From contig NC_068988.1 in assembly GCF_001194135.2 (NCBI RefSeq), positions 60,862,265 through 60,906,318 of the forward strand: a DNA stretch of 44,054 nucleotides, in the 5' to 3' direction. This stretch comes from Octopus bimaculoides. Taxonomy: Eukaryota. The notes under the pieces are model-generated. The model was given only the letters and a program-made list of their open reading frames with translations. It was not told the DNA's origin and did no database searches. A program made the position numbers and the translations under genes. Position 1 is the stretch's first letter. The number at the start of each line of letters is the position of its first letter. Of the stretch, positions 4,646 to 5,473 are shown piece by piece.

Positions 4646-4744
4646 CCATTGCTAGAAATAAGAGCTAAAATGTTCTAACCCCGTAGTTAACAGACATGAC
4701 TGAAAACGTATACACTAACAGGGACAGTGATTGTCCGAAAATTG

Positions 4745-4818
4745 CCGACTGAAAATTCTCAAGACTAATGCGTAAGTTTCGGCAATTTCCGTTGCTATCA
4801 TCAGTTAAGACAGCTCGG
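4745..4818 (-). ncRNA. Type I hammerhead ribozyme (copy A)
   Basis: Minus strand reads CCGAGCUG-UCUUAA-CUGAUGA-UA-GCAA(CGGAAA)UUGC-C-GAAAC-UUACGCAUUAG-UC|UUGAGA-AUUUU-CAGUCGG. It has the full core, stem I with a distal extension, stem II and a GUC triplet (predicted cut between 4763 and 4762). Stem III has two mismatches. Confidence 0.8.
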
Positions 4819-5093
4819 TATTCTGCTATTTTCGGACCTGTTAGCATATATGCTTTCGTCATCCAAATTAATGGATGATTTAGCGATTTGCTAATGTATA
4901 TACGCAAAATTAATGTAAACAGCAGACTGCAATGTTTCACCAAAAAGCAGAATTATTTCCTCACTAAATGTGACTATGGTGTTAATAAACATCTACATTG
5001 CTAGAGATAAGCGCTAAAATGCAGTAATGTTGTAGTTAACACACATGAATAAAATCATATACACTAACAAGGACCATGATTGTCCAAAAAATG

Positions 5094-5150
5094 CCGACCG
5101 CGAACTTTTGAGAGTAACGCGTTAGTTTCGGCAATTTCCGTTGCCATCAT
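5094..5150 (-). ncRNA. Truncated hammerhead ribozyme (copy B)
   Basis: Reads AUGAU-GGCAA(CGGAAA)UUGCC-GAAAC-UAACGCGUUA-CUC-UCAAAA. Stem II is perfect, but the CUG of the core and the 5' strand of stem I are removed by the inversion junction. Confidence 0.7.
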
Positions 5151-5264
5151 TGTTGTTTACATTAATTTTGTGTTTACACATTAGCGAATCGCTACATCAT
5201 CCATTTATTTGGATGACGAAAACATATATGCTAATAGGGAGACAGGTGCGGGAATAGCCGAACA

Positions 5265-5338
5265 CCGAGCTGGCTTAACTGATGATAGCAACGGAAATTC
5301 CTGAAACTGACGCATTAGACTTAAAACTTCTCGGTCGG
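5265..5338 (+). ncRNA. Type I hammerhead ribozyme (copy C, degenerate)
   Basis: Reads CCGAGCTG-GCTTAA-CTGATGA-TAGCAACGGAAATTCCT-GAAAC-TGACGCATTAG-AC-TTAAAA-CTTCT-CGGTCGG. The core is intact, the triplet is mutated to GAC and stem II is damaged. Confidence 0.7.
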
Positions 5339-5473
5339 CATTTTTCGGACAATTATTGCTCCTGTTAGTGTATACGTTTTCTTTCATGTGCTTTAACTAC
5401 AGCGTTAGAGCATTTTAGTTCTAATCTTTAGGAATATAGGTATTTTTTAACACTCTAGTCACATTTAGTAACG

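What the first reader, a model, noticed from the sequence alone, without database searches (positions are those of the whole stretch)
4647..5469. 349-bp hammerhead-bearing tandem unit: candidate cephalopod non-LTR retrozyme (circRNA-producing)
Seen: a 349-bp unit repeated head-to-tail (A plus partial B) and once inverted (C). Merging the three copies gives a textbook type I HHR: CCGAGCUG-UCUUAA-CUGAUGA-U-GGCAA(CGGAAA)UUGCC-GAA-ACUAACGCGUUAGU-C|UUAAGA-N5-CRGUCGG. Stem III is a perfect 14-nt palindrome, and stem I has a conserved distal helix beyond a 5-nt bulge. The predicted cut sites in A (4763/4762) and B (5112/5111) are exactly 349 nt apart. Known: metazoan non-LTR retrozymes are tandem monomers of a few hundred bp with type I HHRs that yield circular RNAs, and PLE pseudo-LTRs also carry HHRs. 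Inference: this is a decayed member of a non-coding ribozyme retroelement family. I cannot tell whether it has been described in cephalopods. Each copy here has mutations, and A is the most likely to retain activity.
Basis: partly seen in the sequence, partly recalled or inferred. Interest (0 to 1): 0.85.

Follow-up and report, generated by a model that had tools for sequence, protein, structure and literature searches.

The report
Decayed hammerhead-ribozyme retroelement (retrozyme) insertion
This is an old, mutated insertion of a small non-coding mobile element whose 349-base units each carry a self-cleaving hammerhead ribozyme of the Penelope-element type; it is a fossil member of a known class, not a new kind of system.

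Summary
The repeat is real. A full 349-nt unit (A, 4641-4989) is followed by a partial tandem unit (B, 4990-5150) and an inverted unit (C, 5151-5474). They are 80-85% alike, and the window holds no other copy. The predicted cut sites in A and B are exactly 349 nt apart.

The "textbook" ribozyme exists only as a composite of the best bases from three copies. Only A passes a relaxed hammerhead descriptor. B lacks CUGA and the 5' strand of helix I, and C lacks the A15.1-U16.1 pair. No Rfam hammerhead model aligns to the motif in any copy.

The motif matches published hammerheads of Penelope-like elements (PLEs). It has a bulged base before helix II, a palindromic helix III that is stable only as a dimer, and copies on opposite strands.

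The layout is a sense partial tandem meeting an inverted 5'-truncated copy head-to-head, next to (TA)n. That is the published PLE insertion pattern, and two PLE gene fragments lie in the window.

Best reading: a decayed non-LTR retrozyme inserted by PLE machinery from a multimeric or circular RNA. I could not test genome-wide copies, circular RNA, self-cleavage or cephalopod origin. It is a new member of a known kind, of modest interest.

The parts
4641..4989 (-). Unit A: one complete 349-nt monomer. The sense (ribozyme) strand is minus, and the 3' end of the sense array lies at 4641.
   Evidence: Direct repeat D2 with spacing 349; blastn and nhmmer; alignment.
4741..4818 (-). Hammerhead motif of A. 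CUGAUGA is 4804->4798 and the bulged U is 4797. Helix II is AGCAA/UUGCC with an A.C mismatch, followed by GAA. Helix III is ACUUA(CGCA)UUAGU with a U.U mismatch. C17 is 4763, giving predicted cleavage at 4763/4762. Helix I has 6 bp, a 5-nt bulge, then 7 bp.
   Evidence: Only site in the window that passes the relaxed descriptor; model R1 gives 103 bits, by construction; pair table.
4990..5150 (-). Unit B: a 5'-truncated sense monomer in tandem with A. Its start falls inside the ribozyme core.
   Evidence: 80% identity to A at spacing 349.
5090..5150 (-). Partial hammerhead of B. It lacks CUGA and the 5' strand of helix I. It is the only copy with G10.1-C11.1 and a CGCG loop. C17 is 5112, giving predicted cleavage at 5112/5111.
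   Evidence: Alignment A1; R1 match with the 5' part absent.
5151..5474 (+). Unit C: an inverted, 5'-truncated copy that meets B head-to-head at 5150/5151. It runs through a unit junction at 5441/5442 and ends against (TA)n.
   Evidence: Inverted repeats I1-I3; blastn; alignment.
5265..5342 (+). Hammerhead motif of C. CUGAUGA is 5279-5285 and C17 is 5320. It has A.A at 15.1/16.1, C.C in helix II, and only 4 bp in proximal helix I.
   Evidence: fails the descriptor.
5476..5532 (.). (TA)n microsatellite abutting the 3' end of C. This is the likely target sequence.
   Evidence: TRF. The PLE preference for (TA)n is from PMC8557442.
4218..4640 (+). Flank, not part of the element: a decayed, frame-shifted fragment of a Penelope-like element ORF, from the region between the RT and the GIY-YIG endonuclease. 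It is bounded by (TA)n at 4190-4217 and cut off at unit A.
   Evidence: Translation. phmmer finds P0004 and relatives at 58-65% identity. L064 is 70% identical at DNA level over 4241-4505. A relative at L067:6085-6666 has RVT_1 upstream and an RGY...PFITTY segment like the N-terminus of P0001, which ends in GIY-YIG.

Best explanation
The 834-bp block 4641-5474 is one old insertion of a short, non-coding, hammerhead-bearing retroelement: a non-LTR retrozyme, that is, a non-autonomous derivative of Penelope-like elements.

Inferred life cycle, from the published model:
1. A tandem array is transcribed.
2. The hammerhead in each unit cuts after GUC. Here it probably works as a double hammerhead, in which two units share an extended palindromic helix III.
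3. This releases 349-nt monomers that a host RNA ligase circularises.
4. A PLE reverse transcriptase/GIY-YIG endonuclease copies the circular or multimeric RNA into a nicked target.

Inferred insertion event: both 3'-OH ends of a break at a (TA)n tract primed reverse transcription. One end gave the minus-sense copy (A, then partial B; 3' end at 4641). The other gave the plus-sense copy (C; 3' end at 5474). The two 5'-truncated cDNAs were joined head-to-head at 5150/5151.

Since then the three copies have each drifted about 10% neutrally, and none now has an intact ribozyme.

Shown: the repeat anatomy, the motif, the 349-nt spacing of cut sites, the unit junction seen twice, and the PLE fragments nearby. 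Inferred: transcription, cleavage, circularisation, the mobilising enzyme and the two-sided priming.
For: - Repeat anatomy and 349-nt period.
- The same head-to-tail junction occurs at 4989/4990 and inside C at 5441/5442. The template was therefore a multimer or circle of a 349-nt unit, not a 3-kb element.
- The sense array and the inverted copy end at different unit positions (4641 versus 33 nt further, at 5474). A template with no fixed 3' end predicts this.
- The hammerhead core and three helices are in type I topology. Only copy A matches the descriptor, with 0.022 sites expected per random window, or 0.0014 with a 6/6 helix I. The motif also falls inside the only long-period repeat of the window.
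- 87.5% of pair cells are paired in register, against at most 43% when slid.
- The bulged U before helix II, the palindromic helix III, and hammerheads 100-700 bp apart on opposite strands are the published traits of PLE hammerheads (PMC4209133).
- Helix III is -0.5 kcal/mol as a hairpin and -20.5 as a homodimer.
- A partial tandem plus an adjacent inverted 5'-truncated copy, and a (TA)n target bias, are the published PLE insertion pattern (PMC8557442).
- Unit size, 37% GC and lack of coding capacity fit the retrozyme definition (PMC7229834).
- The monomer is strongly self-paired: z = -2.9 linear, and z = -3.7 with 66% of bases paired when circular.
- PLE fragments lie at 4218-4640 and 33006-33204.
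- The ribozyme segment is only marginally more conserved than the rest of the unit (81-87% against 78-88%), which is no clear sign of selection and fits a dead insertion drifting neutrally.
Against: - No Rfam hammerhead model aligns to the motif in any copy, even at E<=10 on 110-nt slices.
- No copy passes a strict descriptor.
- The majority consensus still has an A.C at 10.1/11.1.
- In nearest-neighbour folding the HHR fold is clearly less stable than the alternatives. Copy A gives -8 kcal/mol against -19 to -25, and the best composite gives -15 against -20. In the alternatives, CUGAUG pairs with CAUUAG, or CGGAAAUUGCCGA pairs with UCGGCAAUUUUCG.
- With three related copies, covariation is not informative: one double change, reached by 329 of 500 shuffles.
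- No further copy was found in the window or in the viral, metagenome or prokaryote collections. The source genome could not be searched.
- No target-site duplication is visible.
- The left flank is a 3'-truncated PLE ORF rather than (TA)n, so the model needs an extra step, such as insertion into an older PLE copy with loss of its 3' part.
Confidence: 0.65

Rival explanations
1. The units are not an independent non-autonomous family. They are the terminal pseudo-LTR or 3' region of an autonomous PLE that itself contains short tandem hammerhead units, and this locus is a heavily 5'-truncated insertion of that PLE. C and the ORF fragment at 4218-4640 could even belong to the same plus-strand copy.
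For: - The hammerhead has PLE-type features.
- PLE pseudo-LTRs carry minimal hammerheads in tandem (PMC7229834; PMC7761336).
- Retrozymes and pseudo-LTRs are sequence relatives in Xenopus (preprint 10.64898/2026.07.22.740005).
- The PLE ORF fragment at 4218-4640 and copy C are on the same strand and in the right order.
Against: - The sequence after the unit's 3' end is the same unit again, at two independent junctions. It is not a 5' UTR or an ORF.
- The endonuclease part of the ORF that should separate 4640 from C is absent. Only 33006-33204 matches it in the window.
- A and B lie inverted between the ORF fragment and C.
- Helix II (5 bp) and helix I (6+7 bp) are unlike the published minimal PLE hammerheads, which have 6-8 bp and 4-5 bp.
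Confidence: 0.17
2. This is an ordinary local duplication or inversion, or a small satellite, whose sequence happens to resemble a hammerhead. No ribozyme or retroelement is involved.
For: - There are only about 2.4 copies, all at one locus.
- Rfam is silent.
- There is no selective signal on the motif and no meaningful covariation.
- The HHR fold is not the minimum-energy fold.
Against: - The motif is unlikely by chance: 0.0014-0.022 expected per window, before requiring that it fall within the 834 bp of the repeat.
- It also carries the specific bulged base and palindromic helix III of PLE hammerheads.
- The head-to-head joining of two differently truncated copies next to (TA)n matches PLE integration. 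It does not match replication slippage or a symmetric snap-back, because the two arms are not mirror images at 5150/5151.
Confidence: 0.1
3. The tandem/inverted arrangement is an assembly artefact of a gap-rich short-read draft.
For: - The window has 14 runs of N and many microsatellites.
- PLE tandem/inverted structures are known to trouble short-read assemblies (PMC8557442).
Against: - The copies differ by 15-20% with independent substitutions. Artefactual duplications are near-identical.
- There is no N run inside 4218-5560.
Confidence: 0.03

Closest known systems
Metazoan non-LTR retrozymes (Cervera & de la Pena 2020, PMC7229834), e.g. the Mytilus galloprovincialis 350-390 bp repeats
   Same: Both are short head-to-tail units of a few hundred bp with low GC and no coding capacity. 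Each unit carries one type I-topology hammerhead, the predicted monomer is highly self-paired, and PLEs occur in the same genome.
   Different: Here there are only 1.46 sense units plus one inverted unit, and all are decayed. The hammerhead has a bulged U before helix II and a long palindromic helix III, not the canonical 4-bp helix II, 6-bp helix I and 1-2-bp helix III. Expression, circular RNA and copy number are unknown.
Hammerhead variants of Penelope-like elements (Cervera & de la Pena 2014, PMC4209133)
   Same: Both have an unpaired base at the 5' end of helix II and a palindromic helix III that implies action as a dimer. Pairs of motifs lie a few hundred bp apart on opposite strands, and both are associated with PLE-type tandem/inverted insertions.
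   Different: The published minimal forms have helix II of 6-8 bp, helix I of 4-5 bp and little or no helix III, and they sit in pseudo-LTRs flanking a 3-kb RT-EN ORF. Here helix II is 5 bp, helix I is 6+7 bp with an internal bulge, helix III is a 14-nt palindrome, and the repeat period is 349 nt with no ORF.
Amphibian satellite 2 / axolotl retrozymes (HHR_Amex1/2)
   Same: The tandem units are 330-350 nt, and helix III is weak with a palindromic loop, so efficient cleavage needs a dimeric hammerhead.
   Different: There is no sequence relationship. The amphibian motifs keep the canonical loop-loop contacts and occur in tens of thousands of copies.

Membership tests
Non-LTR retrozyme (PMC7229834) | Short tandem repeats, monomer 150-450 bp, from dimers to multimers | tested here: met
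   The period is 349 nt. There are 1.46 sense units, and C contains a second head-to-tail junction.
Non-LTR retrozyme (PMC7229834) | A type I hammerhead in each monomer | tested here: inconclusive
   Type I topology is present in all three copies. Only A passes a relaxed descriptor, B is truncated, C lacks the 15.1-16.1 pair, and no Rfam hammerhead model aligns to the motif.
Non-LTR retrozyme (PMC7229834) | Low GC (<45-50%); no LTR, PBS or PPT; no protein coding | tested here: met
   GC is 36.7-38.5%. The longest stop-free stretch is 95 aa, and the 92-aa ORF has no homologue. PBS and PPT were not searched for specifically.
Non-LTR retrozyme (PMC7229834) | Many dispersed genomic copies or arrays (a repeat family) | not testable with these tools
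   No other copy lies in the 44-kb window. The accessible collections hold no animal genome of this kind, and pattern scans gave only chance hits.
Non-LTR retrozyme (PMC7229834) | Expressed as linear and circular monomer RNAs after self-cleavage | not testable with these tools
   This needs RNA data or an in vitro assay. Only the predicted 349-nt monomer fold is available (z = -2.9 and -3.7).
Non-LTR retrozyme (PMC7229834) | Co-occurrence with autonomous PLEs in the genome | tested here: met
   Decayed PLE fragments lie at 4218-4640 and 33006-33204. No intact PLE was seen.
Canonical hammerhead, Rfam Hammerhead_1 (RF00163) and clan CL00010 | Score at or above the family's gathering threshold | tested here: not met
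   There is no hit at gathering score. No Hammerhead_1 hit appears at E<=10 even on 110-nt slices, only a spurious 13.8-bit Hammerhead_II fragment on C.
Canonical hammerhead, Rfam Hammerhead_1 (RF00163) and clan CL00010 | Core CUGANGA ... GAA, A15.1-U16.1 pair, H17, G10.1-C11.1 | tested here: inconclusive
   A has everything except G10.1-C11.1, where it has A.C. B has G-C but lacks CUGA. C has A-U at 10.1/11.1 but A.A at 15.1/16.1. All three have an extra U after A9.
PLE-type hammerhead variants (PMC4209133) | Unpaired base at the 5' end of helix II | tested here: met
   A U lies between CUGAUGA and helix II in A, B and C. The descriptor matches only when this 1-nt insertion is allowed.
PLE-type hammerhead variants (PMC4209133) | Absent or small palindromic helix III, acting as a dimer | tested here: inconclusive
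   Helix III is palindromic (perfectly so only in the reconstruction). It gives -0.5 kcal/mol as a hairpin and -20.5 as a homodimer; the present copies give -2.7 to -13.3. At 14 nt it is longer than the published minimal forms.
PLE-type hammerhead variants (PMC4209133) | Long helix II (6-8 bp), short helix I (4-5 bp), located in pseudo-LTRs flanking an RT-EN ORF | tested here: not met
   Helix II is 5 bp and helix I is 6+7 bp. The units follow each other at 349 nt with no ORF between them.
PLE-type insertion architecture (PMC8557442) | Partial tandem plus an adjacent inverted 5'-truncated copy; (TA)n target bias | tested here: met
   The sense copies B+A meet inverted C head-to-head at 5150/5151. 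(TA)n lies at 5476-5532 next to C's 3' end, and (TA)n at 4190-4217 bounds the neighbouring PLE fragment.

The most novel reading that the evidence does not exclude
The locus is a fossil of a live, undescribed retrozyme family in this (possibly cephalopod) genome. Its hammerhead would be intermediate between the minimal PLE pseudo-LTR ribozymes and the canonical retrozyme ribozymes, with the PLE-style bulge and dimer-type palindromic helix III but a long, structured helix I. Such a family would give direct sequence-level support to the idea that retrozymes arose from PLE termini. Like the mussel family, it could produce abundant 349-nt circular RNAs.
Probability: 0.25. Interest if true: 0.5.

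Novelty: new member of a known kind. Interest (0 to 1): 0.3.

Why it matters
If a genome search confirms the family, it would add another mollusc lineage to the list of animals with ribozyme-made small circular RNAs. I found no paper describing retrozymes in cephalopods. It would also provide a hammerhead that mixes PLE-type and retrozyme-type features, and an insertion whose tandem-plus-inverted layout is the PLE pattern. [quoted passage not shown] As it stands, this single locus is a dead copy and teaches little beyond annotation.

Tried and rejected
- **Rfam at gathering score on the whole window, and at E<=10 on 1.2 kb and on two 110-nt slices:** no hammerhead model aligned to the motif; the single hammerhead-clan row was a 13.8-bit misaligned Hammerhead_II fragment on copy C. 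The miRNA 'hits' only reflect the B/C inverted repeat.
- **TRF:** did not report the 349-nt period.
- **Other copies in the window:** blastn, nhmmer, a covariance model built from the three copies with filters off, and a core-only scan all found none.
- **Other copies in public collections:** two degenerate patterns were scanned against metagenome contigs, viral contigs and prokaryote genomes. All hits were seed-only chance matches of at most 32 nt.
- **Spurious-ORF trick:** I searched the 92-aa ORF of unit A against the protein collection to fish out other copies. It found nothing.
- **Reaching DNA of the same animal through PLE protein relatives:** P0001, P0004-P0009 and loci L001, L002 and L064-L067 were fetched. 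Only L064 shares DNA similarity with the window (70%, over the PLE fragment), and none carries the unit or any Rfam hammerhead.
- **PLE fragment at 4218-4640:** the word-seeded search, Pfam and BLASTP against P0001 all failed. Only the exhaustive phmmer search found relatives. Its two top hits (NIDO-domain proteins, multi-stretch) look spurious and were set aside.
- **Snap-back (hairpin) origin of the inverted copy:** rejected, because B and C are truncated at different unit positions.
- **Selection on the ribozyme:** rejected as unsupported, because identity in the motif (81-87%) barely exceeds that of the rest of the unit (78-88%).

Full report
**The observation**

The repeat is present as described. 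A direct repeat joins 4641-4801 to 4990-5150 at a spacing of exactly 349 nt with 80% identity. Three inverted-repeat pairs tie 5151-5474 to the reverse complement of A and B. blastn and nhmmer of unit A against the window recover only these three copies.

In ribozyme-sense orientation, the locus on the minus strand reads: inverted copy C, then a 5'-truncated unit B, then a complete unit A that ends at 4641. C (plus strand, 5151-5474) starts about 66 columns into the unit. It runs through a head-to-tail junction at 5441/5442 that matches the B/A junction, and stops 33 nt into the next unit against a (TA)n tract. The true extent is 4641-5474. TRF missed the 349-nt period. There is no N run inside the block.

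**The ribozyme**

Copy A on the minus strand reads CCGAGCUG-UCUUAA-CUGAUGA-U-AGCAA(CGGAAA)UUGCC-GAA-ACUUACGCAUUAGU-C|UUGAGA-AUUUU-CAGUCGG.

The 'textbook' ribozyme and the 'perfect 14-nt palindrome' are a best-of-three composite.
- A has an A.C at 10.1/11.1 and a U.U in helix III.
- B begins at UGAUGG, so it lacks CUGA and the 5' strand of helix I, and it has a C.C in helix III.
- C has an A.A at the essential 15.1/16.1 pair, a C.C in helix II and only 4 bp in proximal helix I.
- The majority-rule consensus keeps the A.C at 10.1/11.1 and a C.A in helix I.

Three differing columns are CpG versus TpG/CpA: the helix III loop CGCG/CGCA, C11.1/U, and CGG/CAG. The intact ancestral forms are therefore plausible, but this is inference.

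No Rfam hammerhead model aligns to the motif in any copy, at gathering score or at E<=10 on 110-nt slices; the only hammerhead-clan row is a misregistered 13.8-bit Hammerhead_II fragment on copy C, far below its gathering score of 37.

**Is the motif more than chance?**

I wrote a descriptor that allows at most one mismatch per helix and an optional one-base bulge after CUGANGA. It finds only copy A in the window. It is expected 0.022 times per Markov-1 window, or 0.0014 times if helix I must be 6/6. The second figure is post hoc.

The motif also sits inside the only long-period repeat of the window and is shared in register by the homologous copies. 87.5% of pair cells are paired, against at most 43% when the 3' partners are slid.

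Covariation is uninformative with three related sequences. There is one double change (G-C in B, A.C in A, A-U in C at 10.1/11.1), and 329 of 500 shuffles reach the same score. Identity in the ribozyme segment (81-87%) is only marginally above that of the rest of the unit (78-88%). That is what a dead insertion drifting neutrally would show.

**What kind of hammerhead**

Cervera and de la Pena (2014, PMC4209133) describe the hammerheads of Penelope-like elements (PLEs). [quoted passage not shown] They also report pairs of motifs 100-700 bp apart on opposite strands.

All three traits are present here. The extra U also explains why the descriptor matches only with the insertion allowed, and probably why Rfam fails.

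Helix III is marginal as a hairpin: -0.5 kcal/mol for the reconstructed palindrome and 0 for each actual copy. As a homodimer it is very stable: -20.5 for the reconstruction and -2.7 to -13.3 for the present copies.

In nearest-neighbour folding the single-hammerhead fold loses to alternatives. In these, CUGAUG pairs with CAUUAG, or CGGAAAUUGCCGA pairs with the downstream UCGGCAAUUUUCG. Copy A gives -8 against -19 to -25 kcal/mol, and the best composite gives -15 against -20.

So if the ancestor cleaved, it most likely did so as a double hammerhead on multimeric transcripts, like PLE and amphibian motifs. The differences from published minimal PLE motifs are a 5-bp helix II and a long helix I (6 bp, a 5-nt bulge, then 7 bp).

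**What kind of element**

The unit fits the definition of metazoan non-LTR retrozymes.
- Monomers are 150-450 bp; mussel units are 350-390 bp.
- GC is low (36.7-38.5% here), and there are no LTRs and no coding capacity.
- PLEs co-occur in the same genome (PMC7229834).
- The predicted 349-nt monomer is unusually structured: z = -2.9 when linear, and z = -3.7 with 66% of bases paired when circular.

The same head-to-tail junction is seen twice, so the template was a multimer or circle of a 349-nt unit rather than a 3-kb PLE. This is the main argument against the pseudo-LTR rival. The two are probably relatives in any case: a 2026 preprint shows that Xenopus retrozymes are sister to PLE pseudo-LTRs (10.64898/2026.07.22.740005).

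**How it got there**

Craig et al. (PMC8557442) describe PLE insertions as partial tandems, often with an inverted 5'-truncated copy immediately adjacent, and with a bias for (TA)n targets. The block is exactly that. A minus-sense partial tandem has its 3' end at the left boundary. A plus-sense copy has its 3' end at the right boundary against (TA)n 5476-5532. The two 5'-truncated ends are joined head-to-head at 5150/5151.

I infer target-primed reverse transcription from both ends of one break. A snap-back origin is excluded, because the arms are not mirror images at the junction.

The left flank (4218-4640, plus strand) is a decayed fragment of a canonical PLE ORF, bounded by (TA)n at 4190-4217.
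- An exhaustive phmmer search finds relatives at 58-65% identity; P0004 matches along the whole fragment.
- L064 is 70% identical at DNA level.
- A relative at L067:6085-6666 has an RVT_1 segment upstream and an RGY...PFITTY segment downstream. That segment resembles the N-terminus of P0001, which ends in a GIY-YIG domain above Pfam's cutoff.

This ORF is cut off at unit A, and its endonuclease part is not found beyond C. The retrozyme therefore probably landed in an older PLE copy, with loss of the 3' part. This step is unexplained in detail. A second PLE endonuclease fragment lies at 33006-33204 on the minus strand.

**What could not be tested**

- **Genome-wide copies.** Scans of metagenome contigs, viral contigs and prokaryote genomes gave only chance seeds. 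A protein-space trick found nothing. Loci reached through PLE proteins carry neither the unit nor any hammerhead.
- **Cephalopod origin.** The window is an AT-rich, microsatellite-rich, gap-rich draft. From memory only, a SINE-like segment repeated three times resembles an abundant octopus SINE.
- **Prior description.** I found no paper that combines hammerhead ribozymes or retrozymes with cephalopods, beyond a remark on Naiad PLE remnants in that lineage.

**Verdict**

This is a real, decayed insertion of a hammerhead-bearing short tandem retroelement with a PLE-type ribozyme and PLE-type insertion architecture. It is a new member of a known kind, and no copy at this locus is expected to be active. 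My confidence in this reading is about 0.65. The main rival (0.17) is a truncated PLE terminus. Chance resemblance (0.1) and assembly artefact (0.03) are unlikely. Interest is modest (0.3).

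Noticed in passing
window 4218-4640 (+): Decayed, frame-shifted fragment of a Penelope-like element ORF, from the domain between the RT and the GIY-YIG endonuclease. It lies between (TA)n 4190-4217 and unit A. Its endonuclease part is missing, as if the retrozyme insertion removed it.
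   Followed up: yes
window 33006-33204 (-), within ORF 32826-33320: PLE GIY-YIG endonuclease fragment, 59% identical to P0001. The N run at 32203-32764 covers the place where its 3' UTR or pseudo-LTR, and any hammerhead, would lie.
   Followed up: partly
window 5560-5660 (+), 14285-14368 (+), 9278-9378 (-): A SINE-like segment of about 85-100 nt (...GTCCTGAGGTTGATTTGTTCGACTAAAGGCG...AAATGACTGAAACAAATAAGAGA) occurs three times at 75-87% identity. The first copy follows the (TA)n(TG)n tract next to unit C. From memory it resembles the 3' part of an abundant octopus SINE; this was not tested.
   Followed up: partly
window 4736-4748 and 4779-4791 (minus-strand RNA): Inside the hammerhead region, CGGAAAUUGCCGA (loop 2 plus the 3' strand of helix II) is complementary to UCGGCAAUUUUCG, just 3' of the cut site. 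This 13-bp alternative helix dominates the predicted fold of copy A. It could hold the ribozyme inactive, or bring the monomer's ends together.
   Followed up: partly
whole window: The window is a draft-quality assembly with 14 runs of N (5583 bases) and about 99 TRF rows of microsatellites. No convincing cellular gene was seen among ORFs of 90 aa or more.
   Followed up: no
P0002, P0003: The two best phmmer hits to the 39-aa PLE-fragment query are very long NIDO-domain proteins, matched in 6-8 short stretches at 30-36% identity. This is probably a repetitive-domain artefact and remains unexplained.
   Followed up: partly
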